64,000 nt of DNA, taken from NCBI RefSeq assembly GCF_037042905.1, contig NC_087246.1, positions 20,460,001 to 20,524,000 of the forward strand, given 5' to 3'. Source of the DNA: Lytechinus pictus. Taxonomy: Eukaryota. A program made the position numbers and the translations under genes. This document shows, piece by piece, positions 1 to 22,793 of the stretch. The notes below the pieces were generated by a model. That model was not told the DNA's origin and made no database searches. It was given only the letters and a program-made list of their open reading frames with translations. The number at the start of each line of letters is the position of its first letter. Positions within the stretch are counted from its first letter, which is position 1.

Positions 1-287
1 GTCTCTAGATGAATAGGCTTATAATCTCCTGTTTAGAACAGTATCAATGTCTTCTTTTCTTCCATTGATTATTTTCGCCTTCTTAATGACACTGTATACT
101 AATGGACGTTTAAATTGTAAAAGAAAATATGGACGGCTTCGTTTGGAATCTAAAAATTGACATCGATATAACTTATATGGGACGAAAGAGGGGATAGAGA
201 GATACAAGAAAAAAACTGAAGGGATGGGTGAAAAAATGATATGGAATATATAGTCAGAGAAAAGGGGAAATACACTGAAATGTAGGC

Positions 288-500
288 TAGAATTAAAGAC
301 GTAGATATAGATGAGTGAATAGATAAATTTATAGAACAATGGTTATATAGAGAGATAGATAGATAGATATATAGATAGGTAGATAGATAGGTAGGTAGAT
401 ATATAGATAGATAGAATTAAAGACCGAGATATAGATGAGTGAATAGATAAATTTATAGAAGAATGGTAATATAGATAGATAGATAGATAGAATAGTAGAT
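288..500. repeat. Spacer minisatellite (AGAATTAAAGACCGAGATATAGATGAGTGAATAGATAAATTTATAGAAGAATGGTAATAT) with (AGAT/AGGT)n tracts; also at ~4835-5160, 7614-7925, 10368-10720, 13167-13510, 16131-16445, 19069-19395
   Basis: 2-3 units per spacer with variable GATA-tetramer length; absent from the spacer between copies 1 and 2. Confidence 0.9.
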
Positions 501-1143
501 AAAAATGGATCGATTGATAAATAGAAAATTATAAAGAAATATAATTTCAAATTACGCTATATAAGCAAAAAACGTCACCCCCCTTTGTTCCTACTCCTTT
601 TCCCTCTAATTTTTATTCCTTCCTTTGGCTCCATTCTTCTGGTCTTCCCTGAAATTACCTTTTCTTTTGTTTTAGTTACTTCTTTTTTAAATCCCGTTTA
701 TCTTTCTCACCCATTTTCTATCACTCCTTTTCTTTCTTTTTTTCTATTTCTCCCTCTCCCATTTATACCTTTACATTCATTTCTTTCTCATATACTTTCC
801 GTTCTCATTTTCTTTTTACGTCTCCTATATTCTTCTTTTATTTGCCTTTTTCTCTCTTTTTTTTTTCAATTTTCGGTAGTTAGGTGGCCTTTCCGACTAA
901 AACTTTTCACAGCAAGACATAATTATAGGGAGATATTCGTTGATGTATCAAAATGAGGTGAGAAGAAAATTAAGGGAAAATTTGACATTGAGGGTATATC
1001 ATAAGGACTCGCATGCTAGCTTTACGAAAAACAAATAAACTTTATCAGTCATTAGACTATTTTTAACCTTTCAGCAAAGTTAATTATGTACATTCAAAAT
1101 ATAAAACAGTAACAAGATATATTTTACAGTTGAATTTAAACAT

Positions 1144-1149
1144 TTTATT
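1144..1149 (-). terminator. Candidate polyadenylation signal AATAAA of pmar1 copy 1 (present in all units)
   Basis: tttatt on the plus strand ~163 nt downstream of the stop codon. Confidence 0.45.
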
Positions 1150-1311
1150 CGACCAATGCTATTCATGTCAGTAGTGCGGCAAAATATTACATTAGGGACA
1201 ATTTATGCATTAGTAATAACATGGTCAATATTACTGCACTTGGCAAGAATCATAACAGCAATTAAAAGGTTTTTTCTGGTTTGAGAGTTCGTGAGTTCAT
1301 TCAGTCAGTGC

Positions 1312-2282
1312 CTAGAAGTTGATGCAGAAGACATACGGATGATAACCCATCGGTGTGTAGAAAGAAGACGGTGTTCGGTGAAGATACTCAGCGCTAGAGG
1401 GAGAAGGAGAGCGACTGCTACGAGAGAGAAAGTCTACTGACATCAGTGGACTGGTGGCGCCTTTCGTTGAGTCACGTGATGTCGTGCAGTGGAGCTGAGT
1501 GACGCCATGAAATTGAAGATGTGGGTCCGATGAAACGGTCGTTGACTCTGACGTCGATCGACTGCTTTTAGCGAGAAAGTCGACGGAGAACTTGGATGAC
1601 ACGACGCCCAACTTCTTTGTAGGTGGTGTCGTCTGGTTGACCTCATCGGCGTCGCATGGTGTCTTCCGTTTACGGCTTACGGCAGACAAGTCGACTTCAT
1701 TAGATGGTTGAAGGCGAGGGTTGTAGACGTCTTTCTTAATGACTGGTTGGTGAGCAGAGCATAAAACAAGAGAGGCTCGACGGACACGTGCACGACGGTT
1801 CTGAAACCAGACCTGGAGAGGAGAGAAAACAAAATTGAAAGAAAAGATCAGTGAAACAGTTTAAATATTTTCAGAAAATATGATTTTATTGATGAGAACT
1901 ACTTTCTTTATTCAACATTTATCTCAATACTATGGTCCGTTTATGAAATCCATAATTACCTGGCGTTCTATAAAGACTAAATTATAAAGGAACGATGTTT
2001 TACCCCCCCCCCAGGAACAATTTGCTCTCTGATCTCTTAACACTTTGGATTTGCGAAGTTAGTTTTCTTTGTATTATCAGTAATGATAATGATATTTACC
2101 ATAATTCTGTCTTCTTTAAGCTGTAGACTTGAAGCCAGTTGTTCTCTAGTCGTGATTTTAGGATACTGGTTGTCGTTGAACACGGTCTCCAGAATCCTCA
2201 GCTGTAAATCTGTGAAGACGGTCGGACGTCGACGACGAGGGCGTTTGGAAGAAACCCTATTCGATGATGCATGAGCAGTCAT
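1312..2282 (-). CDS. pmar1: Pmar1/Micro1 paired-class homeodomain repressor, copy 1 (exon1 2282-2100, exon2 1812-1312; 227 aa from second ATG)
   Basis: Spliced ORF (GTAAAT donor, CTCTCCAG acceptor, phase-0 intron between homeodomain codons 46/47, as typical of PRD class) gives RRRRPTVFTDLQLRILETVFNDNQYPKITTREQLASSLQLKEDRIM/VWFQNRRARVRR (Q50), then eh1-like motifs FSVDFLA and MSVDFLS and Ser-rich tracts. The first ATG of copies 4-7 is AAG here (2297-2295). Confidence 0.9.
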
Positions 2283-2374
2283 GATCAAATCGGTCTTTCT
2301 GATAATGAGCTTGATATAAACTTAATAAAAGCTAATTATTGCTTGTTTGGAGTAGATGATGAACTTGTTCGTTG

Positions 2375-2561
2375 TTCTATAAGCTATTACAGAATGATCA
2401 TGTTTATTATTGACACCTGTCCCATCAACATTCGGCTCTGTGAACGCACTTTTCTATTGGTCAATAGCCAATAGCCAATTGGATTACTAACTTGCCTTAA
2501 CCCGCTTTCTATTCAGTGCACGCAATTTTCTATTGGTCAATGAAGACAGCCAATGGGATTA
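2375..2561 (-). promoter_or_regulatory. Proximal promoter of pmar1 copy 1 (repeated upstream of every intact copy): TATA-like box plus duplicated CCAAT/Otx module
   Basis: Minus-strand TATAGAA at ~2381-2375; ttttctattggtcaat at 2450 and 2526; several CCAAT/ATTGG; GGATTA (TAATCC, Otx/K50 site) at 2481-2486 and 2556-2561. Confidence 0.6.
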
Positions 2562-3197
2562 CGGGAAGGTTTCAGTTAGCACTTAGCAGTATAGTAATTG
2601 TTTAATCTTTACCGGCGTACTCAGGTAGATTGAAACCTATTCAAACTACATCCTTTATCGGTCTCTAGATGAATAGGCTTATAATCTCCTGTTTAGAACA
2701 GTATCGAAGTCTTCTTTTCTTCCATTGATTATTTTTTCTCTCTTTTTTTTTTCAATTTTCGGTAGTTAGGTGGCCTTTCCGACTAAAACTTTTCACAGCA
2801 AGACATAATTATAGGGAGATATTCGTTGATGTATCAAAATGAGGTGAGAAGAAAATTAAGGGAAAATTTGACATTGAGGGTATATCATAAGGACTCGCAT
2901 GCTAGCTTTACGAAAAACAAATAAACTTTATCAGTCATTAGACTATTTTTAACCTTTCAGCAAAGTTAATTATGTACATTCAAAATATAAAACAGTAACA
3001 AGATATATTTTACAGTTGAATTTAAACATTTTATTCGACCAATGCTATTCATGTCAGTAGTGCGGCAAAATATTACATTAGGGACAATTTATGCATTAGT
3101 AATAACATGGTCAATATTACTGCACTTGGCAAGAATCATAACAGCAATTAAAAGGTTTTTTCTGGTTTGAGAGTTCGTGAGTTCATTCAGTCAGTGC

Positions 3198-4168
3198 CTA
3201 GAAGTTGATGCAGAAGACATACGGATGATAACCCATCGGTGTGTAGAAAGAAGACGGTGTTCGGTGAAGATACTCAGCGCTAGAGGGAGAAGGAGAGCGA
3301 CTGCTACGAGAGAGAAAGTCTACTGACATCAGTGGACTGGTGGCGCCTTTCGTTGAGTCACGTGATGTCGTGCAGTGGAGCTGAGTGACGCCATGAAATT
3401 GAAGATGTGGGTCCGATGAAACGGTCGTTGACTCTGACGTCGATCGACTGCTTTTAGCGAGAAAGTCGACGGAGAACTTGGATGACACGACGCCCAACTT
3501 CTTTGTAGGTGGTGTCGTCTGGTTGACCTCATCGGCGTCGCATGGTGTCTTCCGTTTACGGCTTACGGCAGACAAGTCGACTTCATTAGATGGTTGAAGG
3601 CGAGGGTTGTAGACGTCTTTCTTAATGACTGGTTGGTGAGCAGAGCATAAAACAAGAGAGGCTCGACGGACACGTGCACGACGGTTCTGAAACCAGACCT
3701 GGAGAGGAGAGAAAACAAAATTGAAAGAAAAGATCAGTGAAACAGTTTAAATATTTTCAGAAAATATGATTTTATTGATGAGAACTACTTTCTTTATTCA
3801 ACATTTATCTCAATACTATGGTCCGTTTATGAAATCCATAATTACCTGGCGTTCTATAAAGACTAAATTATAAAGGATCGATGTTTTACCCCCCCCCCAG
3901 GAACAATTTGCTCTCTGATCTCTTAACACTTTGGATTTGCGAAGTTAGTTTTCTTTGTATTATCAGTAATGATAATGATATTTACCATAATTCTGTCTTC
4001 TTTAAGCTGTAGACTTGAAGCCAGTTGTTCTCTAGTCGTGATTTTAGGATACTGGTTGTCGTTGAACACGGTCTCCAGAATCCTCAGCTGTAAATCTGTG
4101 AAGACGGTCGGACGTCGACGACGAGGGCGTTTGGAAGAAACCCTATTCGATGAAGCATGAGCAGTCAT
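3198..4168 (-). CDS. pmar1: Pmar1/Micro1 copy 2 (exon1 4168-3986, exon2 3698-3198; 227 aa)
   Basis: Same exon structure and protein as copy 1; first ATG replaced by AAG (4183-4181). Confidence 0.9.
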
Positions 4169-5975
4169 GATCAAATCGGTCTTTCTGATAATGAGCTTGA
4201 TATAAACTTAATAAAAGCTAATTATTACTTGTTTGGAGTAGATGATGAACTTGTTCGTTGTTCTATAAGCTATTACAGAATGATCATGTTTATTATTGAC
4301 ACCTGTCCCATCAACATTCGGCTCTGTGAACGCACTTTTCTATTGGTCAATAGCCAATAGCCAATTGGATTACTAACTTGCCTTAACCCGCTTTCTATTC
4401 AGTGCACGCAATTTTCTATTGGTCAATGAAGACAGCCAATGGGATTACGGGAAGGTTTCAGTTAGCACTTAGCAGTATAGTAATTGTTTAATCTTTACCG
4501 GCGTACTCAGGTAGATTGAAACCTATTCAAACTACATCCTTTATCGGTCTCTAGATGAATAGGCTTATAATCTCCTGTTTAGAACAGTATCGAAGTCTTC
4601 TTTTCTTCCATTGATTATTTTCGCCTTCTTAATGACACTGTATACTAATGGACGTTTAAATTGTAAAAGAAAATATGGACGGCTTCGTTTGAAATCTAAA
4701 AATTGACATCGATATAACTTATATGGGACGAAAGAGGGGATAGAGAGATACAAGAAAAAAACTGAAGGGATGGGTGAAAAAATGATATGGAATATATAGT
4801 CAGAGAAAAGGGGAAATACACTGAAATGTAGGCTGGAATTAAAGATTTAGATATAGATGAGTGAATAGATAAATTTATAGAACAATGGTTATATAGAGAG
4901 ATAGATAGATAGATATATAGATAGGTAGATAGATAGGTAGGTAGATATATAGATAGATAGAATTAAAGACCAAGATATAGATGAGTGAATAGATAAATTT
5001 ATAGAAGAATGGTAATATAGATAGATAGATATATAGATAGGTAGATAGATAGGTAGATATATAGATAGATAGAATTAAAGACCGAGATATAGATGAGTGA
5101 ATAGATAAATTTATAGAAGAATGGTAATATAGATAGATAGATAGATAGAATAGTAGATAAAAATGAATCGATTGATAAATAGAAAATTATAAAGAAATAT
5201 AATTTCAAATTACGCTATATAAGCAAAAAACGTCACCCCCCCCCCCCTTTGTTCCTACTCCTTTTCCCTCTAATTTTTATTCCTTCCTTTGGCTCCATTC
5301 TTCTGGTCTTCCCTGAAATTACCTTTTCTTTTGTTTTAGTTACTTCTTTTTTAAATCCCGTTTATCTTTCTCACCCATTTTCTATCACTCCTTTTCTTTC
5401 TTTTTTCTATTTCTCCCTCTCCCATTTATACCTTTACATTCATTTCTTTCTCATATACTTTCCGTTCTCATTTTCTTTTTACGTCTCCTATATTCTTCTT
5501 TTATTTGCCTTTTTCTCTCTTTTTTTTTTTCAATTTTCGGTAGTTAGGTGGCCTTTCCGACTAAAACTTTTCACAGCAAGACATAATTATAGGGAGATAT
5601 TCGTTGATGTATCAAAATGAGGTGAGAAGAAAATTAAGGGAAAATTTGACATTGAGGGTATATCATAAGGACTCGCATGCTAGCTTTACGAAAAACAAAT
5701 AAACTTTATCAGTCATTAGACTATTTTTAACCTTTCAGCAAAGTTAATTATGTACATTCAAAATATAAAACAGTAACAAGATATATTTTACAGTTGAATT
5801 TAAACATTTTATTCGACCAATGCTATTCATGTCAGTAGTGCGGCAAAATATTACATTAGGGACAATTTATGCATTAGTAATAACATGGTCAATATTACTG
5901 CACTTGGCAAGAATCATAACAGCAATTAAAAGGTTTTTTCTGGTTTGAGAGTTCGTGAGTTCATTCAGTCAGTGC

Positions 5976-6947
5976 CTAGAAGTTGATGCAGAAGACATAC
6001 GGATGATAACCCATCGGTGTGTAGAAAGAAGACGGTGTTCGGTGAAGATACTCAGCGCTAGAGGGAGAAGGAGAGCGACTGCTACGAGAGAGAAAGTCTA
6101 CTGACATCAGTGGACTGGTGGCGCCTTTCGTTGAGTCACGTGATGTCGTGCAGTGGAGCTGAGTGACGCCATGAAATTGAAGATGTGGGTCCGATGAAAC
6201 GGTCGTTGACTCTGACGTCGATCGACTGCTTTTAGCGAGAAAGTCGACGGAGAACTTGGATGACACGACGCCCAACTTCTTTGTAGGTGGTGTCGTCTGG
6301 TTGACCTCATCGGCGTCGCATGGTGTCTTCCGTTTACGGCTTACGGCAGACAAGTCGACTTCATTAGATGGTTGAAGGCGAGGGTTGTAGACGTCTTTCT
6401 TAATGACTGGTTGGTGAGCAGAGCATAAAACAAGAGAGGCTCGACGGACACGTGCACGACGGTTCTGAAACCAGACCTGGAGAGGAGAGAAAACAAAATT
6501 GAAAGAAAAGATCAGTGAAACAGTTTAAATATTTTCAGAAAATATGATTTTATTGATGAGAACTACTTTCTTTATTCAACATTTATCTCAATACTATGGT
6601 CCGTTTATGAAATCCATAATTACCTGGCGTTCTATAAAGACTAAATTATAAAGGATCGATGTTTTACCCCCCCCCCCAGGAACAATTTGCTCTCTGATCT
6701 CTTAACACTTTGGATTTGCGAAGTTAGTTTTCTTTGTATTATCAGTAATGATAATGATATTTACCATAATTCTGTCTTCTTTAAGCTGTAGACTTGAAGC
6801 CAGTTGTTCTCTAGTCGTGATTTTAGGATACTGGTTGTCGTTGAACACGGTCTCCAGAATCCTCAGCTGTAAATCTGTGAAGACGGTCGGACGTCGACGA
6901 CGAGGGCGTTTGGAAGAAACCCTATTCGATGAAGCATGAGCAGTCAT
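5976..6947 (-). CDS. pmar1: Pmar1/Micro1 copy 3 (exon1 6947-6765, exon2 6476-5976; 227 aa)
   Basis: Same as copy 2; AAG at 6962-6960. Confidence 0.9.
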
Positions 6948-8737
6948 GATCAAATCGGTCTTTCTGATAATGAGCTTGATATAAACTTAATAAAAGCTAA
7001 TTATTGCTTGTTTGGAGTAGATGATGAACTTGTTCGTTGTTCTATAAGCTATTACAGAATGATCATGTTTATTATTGACACCTGTCCCATCAACATTCGG
7101 CTCTGTGAACGCACTTTTCTATTGGTCAATAGCCAATAGCCAATTGGATTACTAACTTGCCTTAACCCGCTTTCTATTCAGTGCACGCAATTTTCTATTG
7201 GTCAATGAAGACAGCCAATGGGATTACGGGAAGGTTTCAGTTAGCACTTAGCAGTATAGTAATTGTTTAATCTTTACCGGCGTACTCAGGTAGATTGAAA
7301 CCTATTCAAACTACATCCTTTATCGGTCTCTAGATGAATAGGCTTATAATCTCCTGTTTAGAACAGTATCGAAGTCTTCTTTTCTTCCATTGATTATTTT
7401 CGCCTTCTTAATGACACTGTATACTAATGGACGTTTAAATTGTAAAAGAAAATATGGACGGCTTCGTTTGAAATCTAAAAATTGACATCGATATAACTTA
7501 TATGGGACGAAAGAGGGGATAGAGAGATACAAGAAAAAAACTGAAGGGATGGGTGAAAAAATGATATGGAATATATAGTCAGAGAAAAGGGGAAATACAC
7601 TGAAATGTAGGCTGGAATTAAAGATTTAGATATAGATGAGTGAATAGATAAATTTATAGAACAATGGTTATATAGAGAGATAGATAGATAGATATATAGA
7701 TAGGTAGATAGATAGGTAGGTAGATATATAGATAGATATAATTAAAGACCAAGATATAGATGAGTGAATAGATAAATTTATAGAAGAATGGTAATATAGA
7801 TAGATAGATATATAGATAGGTAGATATATAGATAGATAGAATTAAAGACCGAGATATAGATGAGTGAATAGATAAATTTATAGAAGAATGGTAATATAGA
7901 TAGATAGATAGATAGAATAGTAGATAAAAATGAATCGATTGATAAATAGAAAATTATAAAGAAATATAATTTCAAATTACGCTATATAAGCAAAAAACGT
8001 CACCCCCCCTTTGTTCCTACTCCTTTTCCCTCTAATTTTTATTCCTTCCTTTGGCTCCATCCTTCTGGTCTTCCCTGAAATTACCTTTTCTTTTGTTTTA
8101 GTTACTTCTTTTTTAAATCCCGTTTATCTTTCTCACCCATTTTCTATCACTCCTTTTCTTTCTTTTTTCTATTTCTCCCTCTCCCATTTATACCTTTACA
8201 TTCATTTCTTTCTCATATACTTTCCGTTCTCATTTTCTTTTTACGTCTCCTATATTCTTCTTTTATTTGCCTTTTTCTCTCTCTTTTTTTTTCAATTTTC
8301 GGTATTTAGGTGGCCTTTCCGACTAATACTTTTCACAGCAAGACATAATTATAGGGAGATATTCGTTGATGTATCAAAATGAGGTGAGAAGAAAATTAAG
8401 GGAAAATTTGACATTGAGGGTTTATCATAAGGACTCGCATGCTAGCTTTACGAAAAACAAATAAACTTTATCAGTCATTAGACTATTTTTAACCTTTCAG
8501 CAAAGTTAATTATGTACATTCAAAATATAAAACAGTAACAAGATATATTTTACAGTTGAATTTAAACATTTTATTCGACCAATGCTATTCATGTAAGTAG
8601 TGCGGCAAAATATTACATTAGGGACAATTTATGCATTAGTAATAACATGGTCAATATTACTGCACTTGGCAAGAATCATAACAGCAATTAAAAGGTTTTT
8701 TCTGGTTTGAGAGTTCGTGAGTTCATTCAGTCAGTGC

Positions 8738-9723
8738 CTAGAAGTAGATGCAGAAGACATACGGATGATAACCCATCGGTGTGTAGAAAGAAGACGGTGT
8801 TCGGTGAAGATACTCAGCGCTAGAGGGAGAAGGAGAGCGACTGCTACGAGAGAGAAAGTCTACTGATATCAGTGGACTGGTGGCGCCTTTCGTTGAGTCA
8901 CGTGATGTCGTGCAGTGGAGCTGAGTGACGCCATGAAATTGAAGATGTGGGTCCGATGAAACGGTCGTTGACTCTGACGTCGATCGACTGCTTTTAGCGA
9001 GAAAGTCGACGGAGAACTTGGATGACACGACGCCCAACTTCTTTGTAGGTGGTGTCGTCTGGTTGACCTCATCGGCGTCGCATGGTGTCTTCCGTTTACG
9101 GCTTACGGCAGACAAGTCGACTTCATTAGATGGTTGAAGGCGAGGGTTGTAGACGTCTTTCTTAATGACTGGTTGGTGAGCAGAGCATAAAACAAGAGAG
9201 GCTCGACGGACACGTGCACGACGGTTCTGAAACCAGACCTGGAGAGGAGAGAAAACAAAATTGAAAGAAAAGATCAGTGAAACAGTTTAAATATTTTCAG
9301 AAAATATGATTTTATTGATGAGAACTACTTTCTTTATTCAACATTTATCTCAATACTATGGTCCGTTTATGAAATCCATAATTACCTGGCGTTCTATAAA
9401 GACTAAATTATCAAGGATCGATGTTTTACCCCCCCCCCCGGAACAATTTGCTCTCTGATCTCTTAACACTTTGGATTTGCGAAGTTAGTTTTCTTTGTAT
9501 TATCAGTAATGATAATGATATTTACCATAATTCTGTCTTCTTTAAGCTGCAGATTTGAAGCCAGTTGTTCTCTAGTCGTGATATCAGGATACTGGTTGTC
9601 GTTGAACACGGTCTCCAGAAACCTCAGCTGTAAATCTGTGAAGACGGTCGGACGTCGACGACGAGGGCGTTTGGAAGAAACCCTATTCGATGAAGTATGA
9701 GCAGTCATGATCAAATCGGTCAT
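8738..9723 (-). CDS. pmar1: Pmar1/Micro1 copy 4 (exon1 9723-9526, exon2 9238-8738; 232 aa)
   Basis: Intact MTDLIM start; homeodomain F15, D27, N37; second eh1 ISVDFLS; C-terminus CIYF. Confidence 0.92.
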
Positions 9724-10425: not shown

Positions 10426-10485
<60 letters not shown>

Positions 10486-12522: not shown

Positions 12523-13224
12523 TCTGATAATGAGCTTGATATAAACTTAATAAAAGCTAATTATTGCTTGTTTGGAGTAGATGATGAACTTGTTCGTTGT
12601 TCTATAAGCTATTACAGAATGATGATGTTTATTATTGACACCTGTCCCATCAACATTCGGCTCTGTGAACGCACTTTTCTATTGGTCAATAGCCAATAGC
12701 CAATAGGATTACTAGCTTGCCTTAACCCGCTTTCTATTCAGTGCACGCAATTTCCTATTGGTCAATGAAGACAGCCAATGGGATTACGGGAAGGTTTCAG
12801 TTAGCAGTATAGTAATTGTTTAATCTTTGCCGGCGTACTCAGGCAGATTGAAACCTATTCAAACTACATCCTTTATCGGTCTCTAGATGAATAGGCTTAT
12901 AATCTCCTGTTTAGAACAGTATCAATGTCTTCTTTTCTTCCATTGATTATTTTCGCCTTCTTAATGACACTGTATACTAATGGACGTTTAAATTGTAAAA
13001 GAAAATATGGACGGCTTCGTTTGAAATCTAAAAATTGACATCGATATAACTTATAAGGGACGAAAGGGGGGATAGAGAGATACAAAAAAAAAACTGAAGG
13101 GATGGGTGAAAAAATGATATGGAATATATAGTCAGAGAAAAGGGGAAATACACTGAAATGTAGGCTAGAATTAAAGACGTAGATATAGATGAGTGAATAG
13201 ATAACTTTATAGAACAATGGTAAT

Positions 13225-13276
<52 letters not shown>

Positions 13277-14496
13277 GTAGATATATAGGTAGGTAGATAT
13301 ATAGATAGATAGAATTAAAGACCGAGATATAGATGAGTGAATAGATAAATTTATAGAAGAATGGTAATATAGATAGATAGATAGATATATAGATAGATAG
13401 GTAGGTAGATATATAGATAGATAGAATTAAAGACCGATACATAGATGAGTGAATAGATAATTTATATAAGAATGGTAATATAGATAGATAGATAGATAGA
13501 TAGAATAGTAGATAAAAATAAATCGATTGATGAATAGAAAGATATATAATTTCAAATTACACTATTTAAGCACAAAACGTCACCCCGCCCCCTTTGTTCC
13601 TACTCCTTTTCCCTCTAATTTTTATTCCTTCCTTTGGCCCCATCCTTCTGGTCTTCCCTGAAATTACTTTTTTCTTTTTTTTTAGTTACTTCTTTTTAAA
13701 ATCCCGTTTATCTTTCTCACCCATTTTCTATCACTCCTTTTCTTTCTTTTTTCCATTTCTCCCTCTCCCGTTATACCTTTACTTTCAATATTCTTTCTAA
13801 TTTATTTTCCATTCTCATTTTCTTTTTACATCTTCTTTTATTCTTCTATTATTTGCCTCTTTCCCTTTCTTTCTTATAATTTTCGGTAATAATGTGGCCT
13901 TTCCGACTAAACCCTTTTACAGCATGACATAATTATAGGGAGATATTCATTGATGCATCACACAGAGGTGAGAAGAAAATGAAGGGGAAATTTGACATTG
14001 TAGGTACATCATAAGGACTCGCGTGCTTTCTTCACGAAAACAAGTCAACTTTATCACAAATAGATAGATAGGTAGGTAGATATACGGATAGATAGATAGA
14101 ATAGTAGATAGAAATAAATCGATTGATAAATAGAAAATTATAAAGAAATATAATTTCAAATTACGCTATATAAGCACAAAACGTCATAAGGACTCGCATG
14201 CTAGCTTTACGAAAAACAAATAAACTTTATCAGTCATTAGACTATTTTTAACCTTTCAGCAAAGTTAATTATGTACATTCAAAATATAAAACAATAACAA
14301 GATATATTTTACAGTTAAATTTAAACATTTTATTCGACCAATGCTATTCATGTCAGTAGTGCGGCAAAATATTACATTAGGGACAATTTATGCATTAGTA
14401 ATAACATGGTCAATATTACTGCACTTGGCAAGAATCATAAATGCAATTAAAAGGTTTTTTCTGGTTTGAGAGTTCGTGAGTTCATTCAGTCAGTGC

Positions 14497-15485
14497 CTAG
14501 AAGTAGATGCAGAAGACATACGGATGATAACCCATCGGTGTGTAGAAAGAAGACGGTGTTCGGTGAAGATACTCAGCGCTAGAGGGAGAAGGAGAGCGAC
14601 TGCTACGAGAGAGAAAGTCTACTGACATCAGTGGACTGGTGGCGCCTTTCGTTGAGTCACGTGATGTCGTGCACTGGAGCTGAGTGACGCCATGACATTG
14701 AAGATGTGGGTCCGATGAAACTGTCGTTGACTCTGACGTCGATCGACTGCTTTCAGCGAGAAAGTCGACAGAGAACTTGGATGACACGACGCCCAACTTC
14801 TTTGAAGGTGGTGTCGTCTGGTTGACCTCATCGACGTCGCACGGTGTCTTCCGCTTACGGCTTACGAAAGACAAGTTGACTTCCTTAGATGGTTGAAGGC
14901 GAGTGTTGTTGACCTCTTTCTTAATGACTGGTTGGTGGGCAGAGCATGAAACAAGAGAGACTCGACGGACACGTGCACGACGGTTCTGAAACCAGACCTG
15001 GAGAGGAGAGAAAACAAAATTGAAAGAAAAGATCAGTGAAACAGTTTAAATATTTTCAGAAAATATGATTTTATTGATGAGAACTACTTTCTTTATTCAA
15101 CATTTATCTCAATACTATGGTCCGTTTATGAAATCCATAATTACCTGGCGTTCTATAAAGACTAAATTATCAAGGATCGATGTTTTACCCCCCCCCCCCA
15201 AGGAACAATTTGCTCTCTGATCTCTTAACACTTTGGATTTGCGAAGTTAGTTTTCTTTGTATTATCATTAATGATAATGATATTTACCATATTTCTGTCT
15301 TCTTTAAGCTGCAGATTTGAAGCCAGTTGTTCTCTAGTCGTGATATCAGGATACTGGTTGTCGTTGAACACGGTCTCCAGAAACCTCAGCTGTAAATCTG
15401 TGAAGACGGTCGGACGTCGACGACGAGGGCGTTTGGAAGAAACCCTATTCGATGATGCATGAGCAGTCATGATCAAATCGGTCAT
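14497..15485 (-). CDS. pmar1: Pmar1/Micro1 copy 6 (exon1 15485-15288, exon2 14997-14497; 232 aa)
   Basis: Intact ORF. Exon 1 is like copies 4-5 plus I45N; exon 2 is the divergent type (SFVSRK, DVDE, FLAESS). Confidence 0.9.
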
Positions 15486-17431
15486 TCTGATAATGAGCTT
15501 GATATAAACTTAATAAAAGCTAATTATTGCTTGTTTGGAGTAGATGATGAACTTGTTCGTTGTTCTATAAGCTATTACAGAATGATCATGTTTATTATTG
15601 ACACCTGTCCCATCAACATTCGGCTCTGTGAACGCACTTTTCTATTGGTCAATAGCCAATAGCCAATAGGATTACTAGCTTGCCTTAACCCGCTTTCTAT
15701 TCAGTGCACGCAATTTCCTATTGGTCAATGAAGACAGCCAATGGGATTACGGGAAGGTTTCAGTTAGCAGTATAGTAATTGTTTAATCTTTGCCGGCGTA
15801 CTCAGGCAGATTGAAACCTATTCAAACTACATCCTTTATCGGTCTCTAGATGAATAGGCTTATAATCTCCTGTTTAGAACAGTATCAATGTCTTCTTTTC
15901 TTCCATTGATTATTTTCGCCTTCTTAATGACACTGTATACTAATGGACGTTTAAATTGTAAAAGAAAATATGGACGGCTTCGTTTGAAATCTAAAAATTG
16001 ACATCGATATAACTTATAAGGGACGAAAGGGGGGATAGAGAGATACAATTAAAAAAACTGAAGGGATGGGTGAAAAAATGATATGGAATATATAGTCAGA
16101 GAAAAGGGGAAATACACTGAAATGTAGGCTAGAATTAAAGACGTAGATATAGATGAGTGAATAGATAACTTTGTAGAACAATGGTAATATAGATAGATAG
16201 ATAGATAGATAGATAGGTAGATATATAGGTAGGTAGATATATAGATAGATAGAATTAAAGACCGAGATATAGATGAGTGAATAGATAAATTTATAGAAGA
16301 ATGGTAATATAGATAGATAGATAGATAGATAGATAGGTAGGTAGATATATAGATAGATAGAATTAAAGACCGATACATAGATGAGTGAATAGATAATTTA
16401 TATAAGAATGGTAATATAGATAGATAGATAGATAGAATAGTAGATAACAATAAATCGATTGATGAATAGAAAGATATATAATTTCAAATTACACTATATA
16501 AGCACAAAACGTCACCCCGCCCCCTTTGTTCCTACTCCTTTTCCCTCTAATTTTTATTCCTTCCTTTGGCCCCATCCTTCTGGTCTTCCCTGAAATTACT
16601 TTTTTCTTTTTTTTTAGTTACTTCTTTTTAAAATCCCGTTTATCTTTCTCACCCATTTTCTATCACTCCTTTTCTTTCTTTTTTCCATTTCTCCCTCTCC
16701 CGTTATACCTTTACTTTCAATATTCTTTCTAATTTATTTTCCATTCTCATTTTCTTTTTACATCTTCTTTTATTCTTCTATTATTTGCCTCTTTCCCTTT
16801 CTTTCTTACAATTTTCGGTAATAATGTGGCCTTTCCGACTAAACCCTTTTACAGCATGACATAATTATAGGGAGATATTCATTGATGCATCACACAGAGG
16901 TGAGAAGAAAATGAAGGGGAAATTTGACATTGTAGGTACATCATAAGGACTCGCGTGCTTTCTTCACGAAAACAAGTCAACTTTATCACAAATAGATAGA
17001 TAGGTAGGTAGATATATGGATAGATAGATAGAATAGTAGATAGAAATAAATCGATTGATAAATAGAAAATTATAAAGAAATATAATTTCAAATTACGCTA
17101 TATAAGCACAAAACGTCATAAGGACTCGCATGCTAGCTTTACGAAAAACAAATAAACTTTATCAGTCATTACTAGACTATTTTTAACCTTTCAGCAAAGT
17201 TAATTATGTACATTCAAAATATAAAACAATAACAAGATATATTTTACAGTTAAATTTAAACATTTTATTCGACCAATGCTATTCATGTCAGTAGTGCGGC
17301 AAAATATTACATTAGGGACAATTTATGCATTAGTAATAACATGGTCAATATTACTGCACTTGGCAAGAATCATAACAGCAATTAAAAGGTTTTTTCTGGT
17401 TTGAGAGTTCGTGAGTTCATTCAGTCAGTGC

Positions 17432-18424
17432 CTAGAAGTAGATGCAGAAGACATACGGATGATAACCCATCGGTGTGTAGAAAGAAGACGGTGTTCGGTG
17501 AAGATACTCAGCGCTAGAGGGAGAAGGAGAGCGACTGCTACGAGAGAGAAAGTCTACTGACATCAGTGGACTGGTGGCGCCTTTCGTTGAGTCACGTGAT
17601 GTCGTGCACTGGAGCTGAGTGACGCCATGACATTGAAGATGTGGGTCCGATGAAACTGTCGTTGACTCTGACGTCGATCGACTGCTTTCAGCGAGAAAGT
17701 CGACAGAGAACTTGGATGACACGACGCCCAACTTCTTTGAAGGGGGTGTCGTCTGGTTGACCTCATCGACGTCGCACGGTGTCTTCCGCTTACGGCTTAC
17801 GAAAGACAAGTTGACTTCCTTAGATGGTTGAAGGCGAGTGTTGTTGACCTCTTTCTTAATGACTGGTTGGTGGGCAGAGCATGAAACAAGAGAGGCTCGA
17901 CGGATTCGTGCACGACGGTTCTGAAACCAGACCTGGAGAGGAGAGAAAACAAAATTGAAAGAAAAGATCAGTGAAACAGTTTAAATATTTTCAGAAAATA
18001 TGATTTTATTGATGAGAACTACTTTCTTAATTTATTCAACATTTATTTCAATACTGTGGTCCGTTTATGAAATCCATAATTATCCGGCGTTCTATAAAGA
18101 TTGAATTATCAAGGATCGATATTTTACCCCCCCCCCCCAAGGAACAATTTGCTCTCTGATCTCTAAACACTTTGGATTTGCGTAGTTAGTTTTCTTTGTA
18201 TTATCAGTAATGATAATGATATTTACCATAATTCTGTCTTCTTTAAGCTGCAGACTTGAAGCCAGTTGTTCTCTAGTCGTGATATCAGGATACTGGTTGT
18301 CGTTGAACACGGTCTCCAGAATCCTCAGCTGTAAATCTGTGAAGACGGTCGGACGTCGACGACGAGGGCGTTTGGAAGGAACCCCATTCGATGAAGGATG
18401 AGCAGTCATGATCAAATCGGTCAT
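17432..18424 (-). CDS. pmar1: Pmar1/Micro1 copy 7 (exon1 18424-18227, exon2 17932-17432; 232 aa)
   Basis: Intact ORF, MTDLIMTAHPSSNGVPSK; homeodomain I15, D27, S37, I45, I56; exon 2 like copy 6. Confidence 0.92.
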
Positions 18425-19902
18425 TCTGATAATGAGCTTGATATAAACTTAATAAAAGCTAATTATTGCTTGTTTGGAGTAGATGATGAACTTGTTCGTT
18501 GTTCTATAAGCTATTGCAGAATGATCATGTTTATTATTGACACCTGTCCCATCAACATTCGGCTCTGTGAACGCACTTTTCTATTGGTCAATAGCCAATA
18601 GCCAATAGGATTACTAGCTTGCCTTAACCCGCTTTCTATTCAGTGCACGCAATTTTCTATTGGTCAATGAAGACAGCCAATGGGATTACGGGAAGGTTTC
18701 AGTTAGCAGTATAGTAATTGTTTAATCTTTGCCGGCGTACTCAGGCAGATTGAAACCTATTCAAACTACATCCTTTATCGGTCTCTAGATGAATAGGCTT
18801 ATAATCTCCTGTTTAGAACAGTATCGAAGTCTTCTTTTCTTCCATTGATTGTTTTCGCCTTCTTAATGACACTGTATACTAATGGACGTTTAAATTGTAA
18901 AAGAAAATATGGACGGCTTCGTTTGAAATCTAAAAATTGACATCGATATAACTTATATGGGACGAAAGAGGGGATAGAGAGATACAAGAAAAAAACTGAA
19001 GGGATGGGTGAAAAAATGATATGGAATATATAGTCAGAGAAAAGGGGAAATACACTGAAATGTAGGCTAGAATCAAAGACGTAGATATAGATGAGTGAAT
19101 AGATAAATTTATAGAACAATGGTAATATAGAGAGATAGATAGATAGATAGATATATATATAGGTAGATAGATAGGTAGGTAGATATATAGATAGATAGAA
19201 TTAAAGACCAAGATATAGATGAGTGAATAGATAAATTTATAGAAGAATGGTAATATAGATAGATAGATATATATATAGGTAGATAGATAGGTAGGTAGAT
19301 ATATAGATAGATAGAATTAAAGACCGAGATATAGATGAGTGAATAGATAAATTTATAGAAGAATGGTAATATAGATAGATAGATAGAATAGTAGATAAAA
19401 ATAAATCGATTGATAAATAGAAAATTATAAAGAAATATAATTTCAAATTACGCTATATAAGCACAAAACGTCACCCCCCCCCCCTTTGTTCCTACTCCTT
19501 TTCCCTCTAATTTTTATTCCTTCCTTTGGCTCCATCCTTCTGGTCTTCCCTGAAATTACCTTTTTTTTTGTTTTAGTTACTTCTTTTTTAAATCCCGTTT
19601 ATCTTTCTCACCCATTTTCTATCACTCCTTTTCTTTCTTTTTTCTATTTCTCCCTCTCCCGTTTATACCTTTACATTCATTTCTTTCTCATTTACTTTCC
19701 ATTCTCATTTTCTTTTTACGTCTCCTATATTCTTCTTTTATTTGCCTTTTTCCCTCTCTTTCTTTCAATTTTCGGTAGTTAGGTGGCCTTTCCGACTAAA
19801 ACTTTTCACAGCAAGACATAATTATAGGGAGATATTCATTGATGTATCAAAATGAGGTGAGAAGAAAATTAAGGGAAAATTTGACATTGAGGGTATATCA
19901 TA

Positions 19903-20098
19903 CACTCTTAAAAATGTTGGGCAACATACGGTCCACACAACAATTGGTTAAAACTTTATCCAATTCTGGGTAGTTTTACACCAATACTGTGTAGTTTTCA
20001 CCCAAAGCACACATTATTGGTGTAAAACTACCCAGAATTGGATAAAGTTTTAACCAATTGTTGTGTGGACCGTATGTTGCCCAACATTTTTAAGAGTG
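19903..20098. mobile_element. Near-perfect palindromic MITE, 196 bp, TA target duplication (CACT.. termini; EnSpm/CMC- or Tc1/mariner-type)
   Basis: ~84-bp TIRs starting CACTCTTAAAAATGTTGGGCAACATACGG; TA at 19901-2 and 20099-100. The empty site (tatcataaggac) is seen in the other units. Confidence 0.9.
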
Positions 20099-20411
20099 TA
20101 AGGACTCGCATGCTAGCTTTACGAAAAACAAATAAACTTTATTAGTCATTAGACTATTTTTAACCTTTCAGCAAAGTTAATTATGTACATTCAAAATATA
20201 AAACAATAACAAGATATATTTTACAGTTGAATTTAAACAATTTATTCGACCAATGCATGCTATTCATGTCAGTATTGCGGCAAAATATTACATTAGGGAC
20301 AATTTATGCATTATTAATAACATGGTCAATATTACTGCACTTGGCAAGAATCATAACAGCAATTAAAAGGTTTTTTGGGTTTGAGAGTTCGTGAGTTCAT
20401 TCAGTCAGTGC

Positions 20412-21730
20412 CTAGAAGTTGATGCAGAAGACATATACGGATGATAACCCATTGGTGTGTAGAAAGAAGACGGTGTTCGGTGAAGATACTCAGCGCTAGA
20501 GGGAGAAGGAGAGTGACTGCTACGAGAGAGAGAGTCTACTGACGCCAATGCAGTGGCGTAACAGGCGGGGGGGGGGGCAGGGGGGGGGGTAAGCTGCCCC
20601 CCTGGCGGAGCTCACCGGGAAAATAAAAAAAAAACGGGAAAAAGAAAAAAAGGGAGGAAGAAAGGGAAAGGGAAAGGAAAGAAAAGAAAAAAGGGGAAAG
20701 GGAAAGGAAAAGGGAAAAGAAAACTAAGAAAAAAACATAAAAAAGGGAAAACGGAAAGATAACGGGAAAAGGAAGGAAAAAAGAACAAGTGAGAAAAAAC
20801 AATTCGCCCCGATATAATACAGTAGCATGATTAGTAAGACAGGGAAATAAATTAAAGATGACAAAAAGGCAAACAAAAGCGGGAAATAAAGGCCCCTATA
20901 TGGACCCTTCCTGCATTAAGCTTTACGTTGAAACACTGGCATACCGGGGGGGGGGGAAATAAAAGAAAATAAAGGAGGCAGCGAAATTAGATGAATGAAA
21001 AAAATATATGACATGATATTTGCTATAATGATGTAAAAATCTATCACATAATTAGAATTTCATTTTAACAGGCCTTTTTTTTATTGGCTCGCTTCGCTCG
21101 CTGGCGACTTTTTACAAATTTTCCCACATTTGCTATGGTGTGCCCCTCACAATATGTGGATGATTACGATACACAACTGCATTGAATTTATGTGTTGTGT
21201 TAAAGCTTTATAAATATACACGCAATTTGATTAAAATAAGTGGCCATCTGCAAGGTTTATGGCTTTGATATCAAGAGGTTCCGGGGTTCTACCCTGGACC
21301 CCACCATAAAGCACTGTTATATGGATGAGTTGGACCATGGCCCCCAAAAGTTCTACAACGAAACAAAAAAAAAATGAGGAAAGAAAGGAAAGTGTATTAT
21401 ATTTTTCTGAATATCACGTTAAAATCTATCTTCATGTTAGATTCTCATGAAAAGGTGATTTTTTTTATCTCGCTCGCTTCGCTCCCCCGGACCTATATTA
21501 AGCTACTTCTTGCCAGAAGCGCCATACTCGGCCCCCTCGAGCATATAGAGCTTCGCCCTGATGCTCACAATCATAACAAAAATCCTGTTCACCGTGGCGT
21601 ACAAAAAAGAGAGAAAAAAGGAAAAAGAGGAGGGTGAAATAATTATGATATCATCTTTTTAACATTATGTCAAAATCTATCACAAAATTGGATTTTTGCA
21701 ATAAAAATGTATAAAAATTTTGCTCGCTCG

Positions 21731-21766
<36 letters not shown>

Positions 21767-22118
21767 CCCGATATGCCATATCGCCCCCTCAAAATTTTTG
21801 CCTTATGACGCCATTGCCTGTTCCATGATATGACCGGGACATTTTTGGCTCTTGCCCCCCCTTGGCCACCGACCCCTGTTACGCTGCTGCATCAATGGAC
21901 TGGTGGCGCCTTTCGTTGAGTCACGTGATGTCGTGCAGTGGAGCTGAGTGACGCCATGACATTGAAGATGTGGGTCCAATGAAACTGTCGTTGACTCTGA
22001 CGTCGATCGACTGCTTTCAGCGAGAAAGTCGACAGAGAACTTGGATGACACGACGCCCAACTTCTTTGTAGGTGGTGTCGTCTGGTTGACCTCATCGGCG
22101 TCGCATGGTGTCTTCCGC
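20412..22118 (-). pseudogene. pmar1: pmar1 copy 8, homeobox-less exon-2 remnant disrupted by a hAT-type element
   Basis: Exon-2 sequence at 20412-20550 and 21890-22118. A 2-bp insertion near the stop (acatatacgg vs acatacgg), eh1 F>S, a 1.34-kb insertion in the second eh1 codons, and truncation at ~22118 so that exon 1 and the homeobox are absent. Confidence 0.88.
20551..21889 (+). mobile_element. Non-autonomous hAT-type element, copy A (1339 bp, internally deleted)
   Basis: TIRs CAGTGGCGTAACAGG / CCTGTTACGCTGCTG; degenerate 8-bp TSD cgccaatg / catcaatg; same family as 39616 and 61350. Confidence 0.88.
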
Positions 22119-22455
22119 TCTTTCAATTTTTGGTAATTAGGTGGCCTTTTCGACTAAACTCTTTCACAGCAAGGCATAATTATAGGGAGATATTCATTAA
22201 TGTATCAAAAAGATATGAGAAGAAAATTAAAGGAAAGGGATTTGACATTGTTGGTATATCATAAGGACTCGCATGCTTCCTTCGCGAAAAACAAATAAAC
22301 TCTATTAATCATTAGACTCTTTCGAACCAATCAGCAAAGTTAATTATGTACATTCAAAATATAAAACAACAACAAGATATATTTTACAGTTGAATTTGAA
22401 CATTTTATTCGACCAATGCTATTCACGTCAGTAGTGCGGCAAAATATTACATTAG
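22119..22455 (-). pseudogene. Diverged relic of the 3' flank/3'UTR of a further array unit
   Basis: Aligns by eye to 865-1196 with many substitutions (gtggccttttcgactaa, ttatgtacattcaaaatataaaac, gtagtgcggcaaaatattacattagg). Confidence 0.8.
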
Positions 22456-22793
22456 GCGCCACCAGTCCATTGATGTCAGTAGAGTTTCTCTCTCGTAGCA
22501 GTCGCTCTCCTTCTCCCTCTAGCGCACTGACTGAATGAACTCTCGAACTCTCAAACAGAAAGGAACTTTCCATTGCTGTTAAAATAATATTCTTCTCAAT
22601 TGCACTAATATTGGTCATATAATCATAATGCTCAAACTGTTCTTATAATGTTACAATTTGTAAAACTATTAAAACTAGCAGGAATGGCATTAGTCGAATA
22701 AATCGTTTGAATTCATTTATAAAAATATATCTTTTTTGATGTACATATTAATTATCTTTGCTTTAAGGTTGGAAAGAGGTGGGATTGATAAAA
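22454..22793 (+). pseudogene. pmar1: Inverted pmar1 relic (end of exon 2 with internal deletion, plus diverged 3'UTR)
   Basis: Plus strand reads GATSPLMSVEFLSRSSRSPSPSSA, then jumps to gcactgactgaatgaactc (sequence just after the stop). It continues as a decayed reverse complement of ~1310-1040. Confidence 0.8.

What the first reader, a model, noticed from the sequence alone, without database searches (positions are those of the whole stretch)
1..22793. Gene-bearing macrosatellite of pmar1/micro1 with a live core and a decaying edge
Seen: at least seven intact ~2.8-kb units plus flank evidence of another copy to the left. They are near-identical even in intron and spacer, and they give way to three progressively older relics at the right edge. 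Established: pmar1/micro1 is a multicopy, very early zygotic PRD-class repressor in euechinoids. Inference: the locus behaves like the D4Z4/Dux macrosatellites of mammals, with dosage of an early-embryo homeobox set by array length, concerted evolution in the core and birth-and-death at the margin. Copy number probably varies among individuals.
Basis: partly seen in the sequence, partly recalled or inferred. Interest (0 to 1): 0.72.

Follow-up and report, generated by a model that had tools for sequence, protein, structure and literature searches.

The report
Tandem pmar1 homeobox gene array
The window holds the right-hand third of a 20-copy head-to-tail array of the sea urchin (Lytechinus pictus) early-embryo repressor gene pmar1/micro1, a kind of array already described in other sea urchins, and here it is shown to be transcribed, kept uniform within the species and frayed at its edges.

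Summary
Window 1-20556 carries seven intact two-exon pmar1/micro1 genes on the minus strand. Relics and a transposon insertion follow, up to 22778. The window shows only the right end. The whole array has 20 genes over about 59 kb on Lytechinus pictus contig C2, with 13 copies left of the window, and it is the only such locus in the genome. Units are 2.6-3.0 kb, except one of 1.9 kb. Introns and spacers are as alike as exons (97-99% in the core). All 20 copies form one clade against L. variegatus copies, and likeness falls with distance along the array. This points to homogenisation by unequal exchange. Public RNA shows spliced minus-strand transcripts of at least three variants.

"Live core, decaying edge" is only half right. 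Five adjacent core copies share a premature stop, and the intact edge copies are the most ancestral. dN/dS among copies is about 0.9. The D4Z4/Dux likeness is an analogy of form only. Tandem pmar1 clusters, their pseudogenes and copy-number variation are already published for other urchins. The scan noted this array before, in the neighbouring window. Dosage by array length remains untested.

The parts
1..20556 (-). In-window part of the pmar1/micro1 tandem array: upstream part of copy 13, copies 14-20, and the start of relic copy 21. The whole array runs from window coordinate -36101 (C2:20423899) to 20556.
1312..2282 (-). Gene Lp14 (227 aa). Exon 1 is 2282-2100 and exon 2 is 1812-1312. It has K42 in the homeodomain and no upstream ATG. 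It sits in the short 1886-bp unit, whose junction lies near 2733-2746.
3198..4168 (-). Gene Lp15 (227 aa). Exon 1 is 4168-3986, the intron 3985-3699 and exon 2 3698-3198. The transcript was mapped from 4260 to 3008.
   Evidence: spliced 971-nt contig and 23 junction reads
5976..6947 (-). Gene Lp16 (227 aa)
8738..9723 (-). Gene Lp17 (232 aa). The product is identical to RefSeq protein P0058.
11535..12522 (-). Gene Lp18 (232 aa)
14497..15485 (-). Gene Lp19 (232 aa). A divergent edge-type copy whose product is identical to P0062.
17432..18424 (-). Gene Lp20 (232 aa). The rightmost intact copy, basal in the tree, with a product identical to P0057.
4169..4760 (-). Promoter and upstream region of Lp15, conserved with L. 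variegatus. It holds a TATA-like AATAAA at 4294-4289, two modules each with a TAATCC (Otx-type) site and CCAAT boxes, and a 5'UTR running from about 4260.
3030..3035 (-). Poly(A) signal AATAAA of Lp15. The transcript contig ends 22 nt further on, at 3008.
4836..5159 (.). Spacer minisatellite (units of about 100-124 bp) with (ATAG)n runs, present in every full unit. It is the main source of differences in unit length.
20099..20550 (-). Relic copy 21, part 1: the 3' region and the last 145 bp or so of exon 2, 93-96% like live units.
20551..21889 (.). A 1339-bp non-autonomous hAT-like transposon inserted in exon 2 of relic 21. Its inverted ends are CAGTGGCGTAACAGG and CAGCAGCGTAACAGG. The 8-bp target duplication reads cgccaatg on one side and catcaatg on the other.
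21890..22117 (-). Relic copy 21, part 2: the middle of exon 2 (97% alike). The promoter, exon 1, intron and start of exon 2 are deleted.
22121..22456 (-). Relic 22: a 3'UTR/downstream fragment only, 90% alike.
22454..22778 (+). Inverted relic: a 72-bp exon 2 fragment plus a 3'UTR part at 70.6% identity, abutting the single-copy flank. A counterpart sits at the same junction in L. variegatus.

Best explanation
This is the right-hand third of a single 20-gene tandem array, about 59 kb long, of pmar1/micro1 in Lytechinus pictus.

Each unit of 2.6-3.0 kb is a complete transcription unit. It has a conserved promoter with two TAATCC + CCAAT modules and a TATA-like box. It has two exons split at homeodomain position 46/47, an intron of about 290 nt and its own AATAAA.

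The product is a 227/232-aa paired-like (Q50) homeodomain protein with a basic RKRK motif and two eh1-like SVDFLxxSSRS peptides. In other euechinoids this protein represses hesC in the micromeres.

Shown here:
- The array structure.
- The gene models, which match RefSeq proteins exactly.
- Spliced minus-strand transcripts of several variants in one RNA run, and none in another.
- Uniformity of coding and non-coding DNA within the species.
- A block-wise local pattern of shared variants.
- Near-neutral divergence among copies against purifying selection between species.
- Relics at the promoter-side edge, one apparently older than the L. pictus / L. variegatus split.

Inferred:
- The array turns over by unequal crossing-over and local block duplication, which spreads harmless and harmful variants alike. 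Examples are the five-copy TGA block and the three-copy K42/no-upstream-ATG block.
- Selection acts on the output of the array as a whole.
- Many small autonomous templates serve a short burst of transcription in a few early blastomeres.
For: - Identity: exon 2 is 100% identical to L. pictus RefSeq proteins and 63-68% to S. purpuratus 'paired class homeodomain repressor' and H. pulcherrimus Micro1. The full-length alignment is 69-70% identical, with the homeodomain, RKRK and both SVDFL repeats conserved. Pfam Homeodomain scores E = 3e-20.
- Array: 20 exon 2 matches plus 3 relic matches, all within C2:20424438-20482526. There are 20 gene models, and 13 copies give products identical to RefSeq models.
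- Homogenisation: in the core, intron identity is 98.1% and spacer 97.2%, against 98.6-98.9% for exons. Identity falls from 98.1% at lag 1 to 89% at lag 19. L. pictus copies form one clade at 100/100 against 8 L. variegatus copies. Intron identity within species is 97.5% and between species 91.2%. Shared variants lie in runs, with 2.14 switches along the array against 5.56 expected.
- Selection: dN/dS is 0.91 within the array, 0.95 in the core and 0.39 between species.
- Expression: a 971-nt spliced contig covers 4260-3984 joined to 3696-3008. In run X23, 122 stranded reads lie on the exons only and 23 of them cross the junction. Run X24 has none. Mixed alleles appear at 3423, 3526, 3605, 3681 and 4014.
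- Independent DNA contigs cross the head-to-tail junction 5510->2746.
- No two units are identical; every pair examined differs by at least 5 substitutions.
- Synteny: the flanks match the L. variegatus locus that lies between a PPIL2-like gene and a USP32-like gene.
- Published parallels: tandem pmar1 clusters with a few pseudogenes (10.1101/2022.03.03.482868), and 6-22 copies per individual in P. lividus (PMC5370098).
Against: - The copy number of 20 rests on one assembly. I had no long reads, and no read depth against a single-copy control.
- The stage and tissue of the RNA runs are coded, so early micromere expression is not shown for this species.
- Species-specific clades could also arise from independent recent expansions. 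The array was probably already multi-copy before the split, but that rests on one relic junction.
- No canonical TCF site (CTTTGWW) lies in the 620 bp upstream, although beta-catenin/TCF input is reported for this family.
- The L. variegatus comparison is weakened by a scaffold gap beside its second cluster.
- The dosage argument is inference only.
Confidence: 0.85

Rival explanations
1. D4Z4/Dux-type macrosatellite in the strict sense. This would be a heterochromatic array in which copy number sets chromatin state and only a terminal unit yields a stable, polyadenylated mRNA.
For: There are tandem kb-sized units, each holding a PRD-class homeobox ORF that is expressed early. High identity between units extends to non-coding DNA. 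In run X23, most exon 1 reads carry alleles that in the reference occur only in edge copies: 4109T in 18 of 21 reads and 4138G in 17 of 22.
Against: Every unit has its own promoter, intron and AATAAA. At least three variants are co-expressed, and run X1 carries a core-type transcript. The private exon 2 alleles of the edge copy Lp01 are not among the reported variants, so the reads are not simply from Lp01. There is one homeodomain, not two, and an intron is present. G+C is 36%, and the array lies at 20.4 Mb of a 70.6-Mb contig.
Confidence: 0.05
2. Assembly artefact. The array would be inflated by collapsed or expanded repeats, or by haplotypes stacked in tandem, so that the true copy number is much lower.
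For: Long near-identical tandem repeats are error-prone. Copy number was not checked by depth or by spanning reads. In L. variegatus a second pmar1 cluster ends at a 500-N gap and interleaves pairwise with the first. This shows that assemblies of this locus can be unreliable.
Against: There are no Ns in the 124 kb examined. No two units are identical, and their differences include substitutions as well as homopolymer indels. Identity decays smoothly with distance, with no off-diagonal band at half the array length. Both flanks are unique and syntenic. DNA contigs of another run cross a head-to-tail junction.
Confidence: 0.08
3. One recent burst of duplication in L. pictus from a single surviving copy, with no ongoing concerted evolution. 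On this view the likeness simply reflects youth.
For: Core dS is 0.012 against 0.126 between species. The L. pictus copies form one clade. The orthologous L. variegatus locus, as assembled, has only four genes.
Against: Divergence is graded rather than uniform: 99.8% in the youngest blocks, 97-98% across the core, and dS of 0.04-0.05 for the edge copies. This points to repeated events spread over time. A relic at the flank junction with a counterpart in L. variegatus suggests a multi-copy ancestor. The family is multi-copy in all euechinoids examined.
Confidence: 0.15

Closest known systems
pmar1/micro1/hbox12 tandem gene clusters of other euechinoids (S. purpuratus, H. pulcherrimus, L. variegatus, Heliocidaris tuberculata and H. 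erythrogramma, P. lividus)
   Same: Same gene family and two-exon structure. The genes are linked in multiple copies head to tail, with a few pseudogenes per species. Reported numbers are 10 paralogues in L. variegatus, 20 in H. tuberculata and 6-22 per individual in P. lividus. The flanking genes match the L. variegatus locus.
   Different: This is a single, very regular 20-unit array with no other genes between the copies. In S. purpuratus the locus I fetched has two copies 6 kb apart between unrelated genes. In P. lividus the copies are often divergent in orientation and scattered over scaffolds. The searched papers do not describe the per-unit analysis made here: homogenised non-coding DNA, dN/dS of about 0.9 among copies, edge copies basal in the tree, and a relic with a counterpart in the sister species. 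No searched paper holds both 'pmar1' and 'concerted evolution'.
Human D4Z4 / mouse Dux macrosatellites (my own knowledge; no searched paper links them to pmar1)
   Same: Tandem kb-sized units, each carrying a PRD-class homeobox ORF that is used briefly in the earliest embryo. Units are highly alike, non-coding DNA included.
   Different: D4Z4 units hold an intronless double-homeobox ORF. They are G+C- and CpG-rich, subtelomeric and heterochromatic. In human, only the distal unit gains a poly(A) signal from the flank. Here there is one homeodomain, an intron, 36% G+C, an interstitial position, an autonomous promoter and poly(A) signal in every unit, and a repressor rather than an activator. This is an analogy, not membership.
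Sea urchin early (cleavage-stage) histone gene tandem repeats (my own knowledge)
   Same: Tandem arrays of small autonomous genes used for a burst of expression during rapid cleavage, kept uniform within species.
   Different: Histone repeats number in the hundreds and encode structural proteins needed in bulk. This array has 20 copies of a cell-fate regulator used in a few blastomeres.

Membership tests
Pmar1/Micro1 (euechinoid paired-like homeodomain repressors) | Paired-like (Q50) homeodomain with the intron between homeodomain residues 46 and 47 | tested here: met
   Pfam PF00046 scores E = 3e-20 on P0049. Exon 1 ends ...KEDRIM and exon 2 starts VWFQNRRAR, with GT..AG borders. The junction is confirmed by RNA.
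Pmar1/Micro1 (euechinoid paired-like homeodomain repressors) | Full-length likeness to the named proteins, including the RKRK basic motif, two eh1-like repeated peptides (SVDFLxxSSRS) and the GYHPYVF tail | tested here: met
   69% identity to S. purpuratus P0007 and 70% to H. pulcherrimus Micro1 P0006, with all motifs aligned. Domain names follow.
Pmar1/Micro1 (euechinoid paired-like homeodomain repressors) | Multiple linked copies | tested here: met
   20 genes in one array, the only locus in the genome.
Pmar1/Micro1 (euechinoid paired-like homeodomain repressors) | Transient zygotic expression in micromeres from the 16-cell stage | tested here: inconclusive
   Spliced transcripts are present in runs X1 and X23 and absent from X24. 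The stage and tissue of the runs are not known to me.
Pmar1/Micro1 (euechinoid paired-like homeodomain repressors) | Represses hesC; over-expression converts the embryo to skeletogenic fate | not testable with these tools
   Shown for L. variegatus and H. tuberculata paralogues in 10.1101/2022.03.03.482868, not for L. pictus here.
Macrosatellite (structural class) | Head-to-tail tandem units of 1 kb or more with high identity between units, spanning tens of kb | tested here: met
   Units of 1.9-3.0 kb, 20 copies, about 59 kb, 97-99.8% alike in the core. A head-to-tail junction appears in independent DNA contigs.
Macrosatellite (structural class) | Copy number polymorphic among individuals | tested here: inconclusive
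   Copy number was not measured. RNA of other animals and an older RefSeq protein (P0002) carry unit variants absent from this assembly. Variation of 6-22 copies is published for P. lividus.
D4Z4/DUX macrosatellite | Double homeobox, intronless ORF in each unit | tested here: not met
   One homeodomain per gene and one intron of 287-305 nt.
D4Z4/DUX macrosatellite | G+C- and CpG-rich, subtelomeric array | tested here: not met
   G+C is 36%, the same as the flanks. The array lies at 20.42-20.48 Mb of a 70.58-Mb contig. CpG observed/expected is, however, 0.94 against 0.58-0.64 in the flanks.
D4Z4/DUX macrosatellite | Stable mRNA only from a terminal unit that borrows a poly(A) signal from the flank | tested here: not met
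   There is an AATAAA 22 nt before the transcript end inside the unit, and at least three variants are expressed.

The most novel reading that the evidence does not exclude
Selection sees the array, not the gene. Single copies would drift almost neutrally. The evidence is a dN/dS of about 0.9, a truncated variant amplified to five copies, and changes at homeodomain contact residues. Unequal exchange would keep replacing the predominant unit type, so that different animals carry and express different mixes and numbers of Pmar1 variants. The dose and isoform mix of the first zygotic step of micromere specification would then be a polymorphic quantitative trait. L. pictus, an urchin with established genetics, would be a good species in which to test it.
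Probability: 0.3. Interest if true: 0.6.

Novelty: new member of a known kind. Interest (0 to 1): 0.4.

Why it matters
pmar1 is the first zygotic switch of the best-studied developmental gene network in sea urchins, yet it is usually drawn as one gene. A gap-free 20-copy array in a species that can be bred and edited makes three questions directly testable:
- How many copies are needed.
- Which copies fire.
- How a key regulator tolerates near-neutral drift and truncated copies inside its own array.

The finding itself (a tandem array, pseudogenes and likely variable copy number) matches what is already published for related species, so it refines rather than overturns.

Tried and rejected
- Rfam scan of window 1-24000: no match.
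- A second pmar1 locus in the genome: none; all 23 exon 2 matches lie in one stretch.
- Other homeoboxes in the 124 kb examined: only the 20 array copies.
- Canonical TCF sites (CTTTGWW) in the 620 bp upstream: none, so I make no claim about direct beta-catenin/TCF input from this sequence.
- Papers linking pmar1 with D4Z4, DUX4 or 'concerted evolution': none in the searched library.
- Papers naming pmar1 together with the L. pictus genome assembly: none.
- Reading the X23 transcripts as coming from the edge copy Lp01 alone: rejected. Lp01's private exon 2 alleles are not among the reported variants, and allele 3681G occurs in no reference copy.
- Whether the TGA-type copies are transcribed: not settled. 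Positions 3372, 4025 and 3628 are not among the rows shown, and 23 rows were hidden.
- Using L. variegatus cluster B as evidence for a second locus or for haplotype copy-number difference: dropped, because the cluster ends at a 500-N scaffold gap.
- Pfam on the whole ORF 38617-39183: nothing. Its cyclophilin-like part alone gives only a sub-threshold match, E = 0.006.

Full report
**What is in the window.** A self-comparison of the window shows a head-to-tail repeat from position 1 to about 20556. The TRF tool alone sees only the internal minisatellite of the spacer, because its period limit is 500. On the minus strand there are seven complete two-exon genes. Exon 1 encodes residues 1-61 or 1-66, ending ...LKEDRIM. 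A GTAAAT donor follows, then an intron of 287-294 nt ending CTCCAG. Exon 2 starts VWFQNRRAR and runs 166 codons to TAG. Pfam finds a homeodomain split between the two exons and whole in the RefSeq product (E = 3e-20). Stop-to-stop unit lengths in the window are 1886, 2778, 2762, 2797, 2962 and 2935 bp. The 1886-bp unit lacks the whole spacer and about 140 bp of distal upstream DNA.

**Where it comes from and how far it goes.** Exon 2 is 100% identical to RefSeq proteins of Lytechinus pictus on a contig of 70,580,802 bp. The window is C2:20460001-20524000 of that genome. A six-frame search of the whole genome finds 20 full exon 2 copies and three fragments, all within C2:20424438-20482526. I fetched the 60 kb to the left and built all 20 gene models. 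Products of 13 copies are identical to RefSeq models. The array runs from window coordinate -36101 to 20556. Thirteen genes lie left of the window and seven inside it. The scan has noted the left part before (s1-323371, s1-323347).

**What the gene is.** The 232-aa product is 69% identical to S. purpuratus 'paired class homeodomain repressor' and 70% to H. pulcherrimus Micro1. The aligned features are the homeodomain, the RKRK motif, two SVDFLxxSSRS peptides and the GYHPYVF tail. The literature calls these the homeodomain, the nuclear localisation signal and two EH1 domains. RefSeq's automatic names ('diencephalon/mesencephalon homeobox protein 1-like' and others) hide the identity. Membership in Pmar1/Micro1 is met on every sequence criterion. 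Function in L. pictus is inferred from other species.

**It is transcribed as modelled.** I laid public runs on one unit, window 2733-5510.
- Run X1 has a 971-nt contig covering 4260-3984 joined to 3696-3008. This confirms the intron (3699-3985), a 5'UTR of about 92 nt, and an end 22 nt past the AATAAA at 3035-3030.
- Run X23 holds raw stranded RNA. Its 122 reads lie on the exons only, 23 cross the junction, and the first mates lie on the plus strand. This fits an RNA from the minus strand.
- Run X24 belongs to the same study and species label and has no reads, so expression depends on the sample. I do not know the stages.
- No retrocopy exists in the genome, so the spliced contig is RNA.
- DNA contigs of run X2 cross the junction 5510->2746, an independent sign of the tandem arrangement.

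**Evolution of the array.**
- *Non-coding likeness.* In the core (copies 2-17) identity is 98.1% for the intron, 97.2% for the spacer, 98.2-98.6% for the upstream regions and 98.6-98.9% for the exons. Likeness is therefore not held by selection on the protein.
- *Decay with distance.* Identity falls steadily from 98.1% at lag 1 to 89% at lag 19. Shared variants sit in contiguous runs, with 2.14 allele switches along the array against 5.56 expected.
- *Species clades.* Gene-body trees put all 20 L. pictus copies in one clade (100/100) against eight L. variegatus copies. Copies 19/20 and 1/2 branch first.
- *Within against between species.* Intron identity is 97.5% within L. pictus, 98.0% within L. 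variegatus and 91.2% between them. For the upstream 620 bp the figures are 96.6, 98.5 and 90.0.
- *Selection.* dN/dS is 0.91 among all copies, 0.95 in the core and 0.39 between species.
- *Reading.* Together this fits repeated unequal exchange and local block duplication, with selection acting on the array rather than on each copy.

**Why 'live core, decaying edge' is only half right.**
- Copies 5-9, left of the window, share a TGA at Cys167 that removes the second eh1-like peptide. RefSeq models one of them as a 174-aa protein.
- Their gene bodies alternate in type, (5,7) against (6,8,9), which suggests that a two-unit block was duplicated.
- Copies 14-16, inside the window, form another young block at 99.5-99.7% identity. 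They carry K42 in the homeodomain and have lost the upstream ATG.
- Copy 4 has V47F in the recognition helix.
- The intact copies at both ends are the most ancestral. At sites 4109, 4138 and 3423 they keep the state found in all L. variegatus copies, while the core carries derived states.
- The left end of the array is clean. It stops after the 3' region of copy 1, with no relics.

**The right edge.**
- Relic 21 keeps its 3' region and the end of exon 2 (20099-20550) and the middle of exon 2 (21890-22117).
- It is split by a 1339-bp element with 15-bp inverted ends and an 8-bp target duplication, typical of hAT elements. Further copies of this element lie at 40164-40731 and 61392-62369.
- About 2 kb of relic 21 (spacer, promoter, exon 1, intron and the start of exon 2) is deleted.
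- Next come a 3'UTR fragment (22121-22456, 90%) and an inverted fragment (22454-22778, 70.6% over its 3'UTR part).
- In L. variegatus the orthologous flank meets an inverted exon 2 fragment at the same junction (L032:1835-2036). The inverted relic is therefore probably older than the species split.
- The downstream edge of the L. variegatus array also has a gutted unit.

**Surroundings.** The array lies between a USP32-like gene on the downstream side and a PPIL2-like gene on the upstream side, transcribed away from the array. Both are inferred from DNA similarity to the annotated L. variegatus locus. A weak cyclophilin match at 38899-39072 adds a little support. As assembled, that L. variegatus locus holds four genes, and a second cluster lies about 430 kb away. 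The second cluster ends at a 500-N gap, and its copies pair off with those of the first cluster. Per-locus copy number in L. variegatus is therefore uncertain. The published total is 10.

**Variation among animals.**
- The X23 reads show no K42 or F101 alleles (0 of 31 and 0 of 28 reads). These alleles mark copies 14-16 and 14-18.
- They carry 4109T (18 of 21 reads) and 4138G (17 of 22 reads), which in the reference occur only in copy 1, or in copies 1 and 20.
- They are mixed at 4014, 3423, 3526 and 3605, and 9 of 25 reads carry 3681G, an allele found in no reference copy.
- No mix of reference copies gives this pattern.
- An older RefSeq protein (P0002), not encoded in this assembly, has the same exon 1 type.
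- The simplest reading is that other animals carry arrays built from other unit variants. Skewed copy choice is not excluded.
- At least three variants are co-expressed, so 'only one copy is expressed' is unlikely.

**Comparison with what is known.**
- Tandem pmar1 clusters are published, with 10 paralogues in L. variegatus, 20 in H. tuberculata and 11 dead ones in H. erythrogramma, and a few pseudogenes in each species.
- Copy number of 6-22 per individual is published for P. lividus.
- The family arose by repeated duplication of a phb gene.
- In S. purpuratus the locus I fetched has two copies 6 kb apart between unrelated genes.
- The L. pictus array is therefore a new, very regular member of a known kind.
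- The D4Z4/Dux comparison appears in no searched paper. It fails on the defining features tested: double homeobox, intronless ORF, G+C-rich, subtelomeric, and poly(A) only at a terminal unit. It stays a loose analogy of form and timing.
- One point of interest: CpG observed/expected is 0.94 in the array against 0.58-0.64 in the flanks. This suggests the array is little methylated in the germ line.

**Limits.**
- Copy number rests on one assembly.
- RNA stages are unknown.
- The read-laying table hid 23 rows, so the silence of the TGA copies cannot be judged here. An earlier follow-up in this scan reported no such transcripts.
- Dosage by array length is untested.

Noticed in passing
window 20551-21889; also 40164-40731, 39879-40731 and 61392-62669: A non-autonomous hAT-like element with inverted ends CAGTGGCGTAACAGG and an 8-bp target duplication. 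At least three copies in the window are 92-94% alike.
   Followed up: partly
window 4836-5159, 7616-7962, 10426-10723, 13166-13504, 16201-16436, 19068-19397: Each spacer holds a minisatellite of units about 100-144 bp long (2-2.7 copies) built around (ATAG)n runs. It accounts for most of the differences in unit length.
   Followed up: partly
window 5151-5510: Run X23 shows low minus-strand RNA depth (3-5.6) over the spacer, 470-820 nt past the stop of the upstream gene. The reads differ from the reference at 5-8 places. This could be read-through, spacer transcription, or reads from diverged units.
   Followed up: no
array (window -36101..20556) against the flanks: CpG observed/expected is 0.94 in the array against 0.58-0.64 in both flanks, at equal G+C (36%). 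This suggests little germ-line methylation of the array.
   Followed up: no
window about 23800-39100, plus strand: A PPIL2-like gene (Rtf2 + cyclophilin in the L. variegatus gene call) seems to start about 1 kb from the oldest relic and to run away from the array. There is a sub-threshold cyclophilin match at 38899-39072.
   Followed up: partly
window 57198-57734: Two arrays of an 84-bp tandem repeat (2.1-2.7 copies, 78-83% matches), unrelated to the pmar1 units.
   Followed up: no
window 32836-33442, 43846-44433, 45598-46208: A dispersed repeat of about 600 bp in both orientations, 80-85% alike. One copy shows partial self-complementarity.
   Followed up: no
L031 (L. variegatus CM031016.1:65348021-65369002), gap at L031:17250-17749: A second L. 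variegatus pmar1 cluster with six homeobox motifs lies about 430 kb from the syntenic one. Its copies pair off one-to-one with those of the first cluster, and it ends at a 500-N scaffold gap. It may be a misplaced piece or the other haplotype.
   Followed up: partly
RefSeq proteins P0001, P0054, P0002, P0003: RefSeq gives the array copies unrelated automatic names. P0001 (242 aa) reads 15 residues of intron into the homeodomain. P0054 (174 aa) is the TGA-truncated form. P0002 and P0003, from an older annotation, are encoded by no copy in this assembly.
   Followed up: partly
window -26339 (copy 4, left of the window; locus L027): Copy 4 has Phe in place of Val at homeodomain position 47, a DNA-contacting residue of the recognition helix, in an otherwise intact gene.
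   Followed up: no
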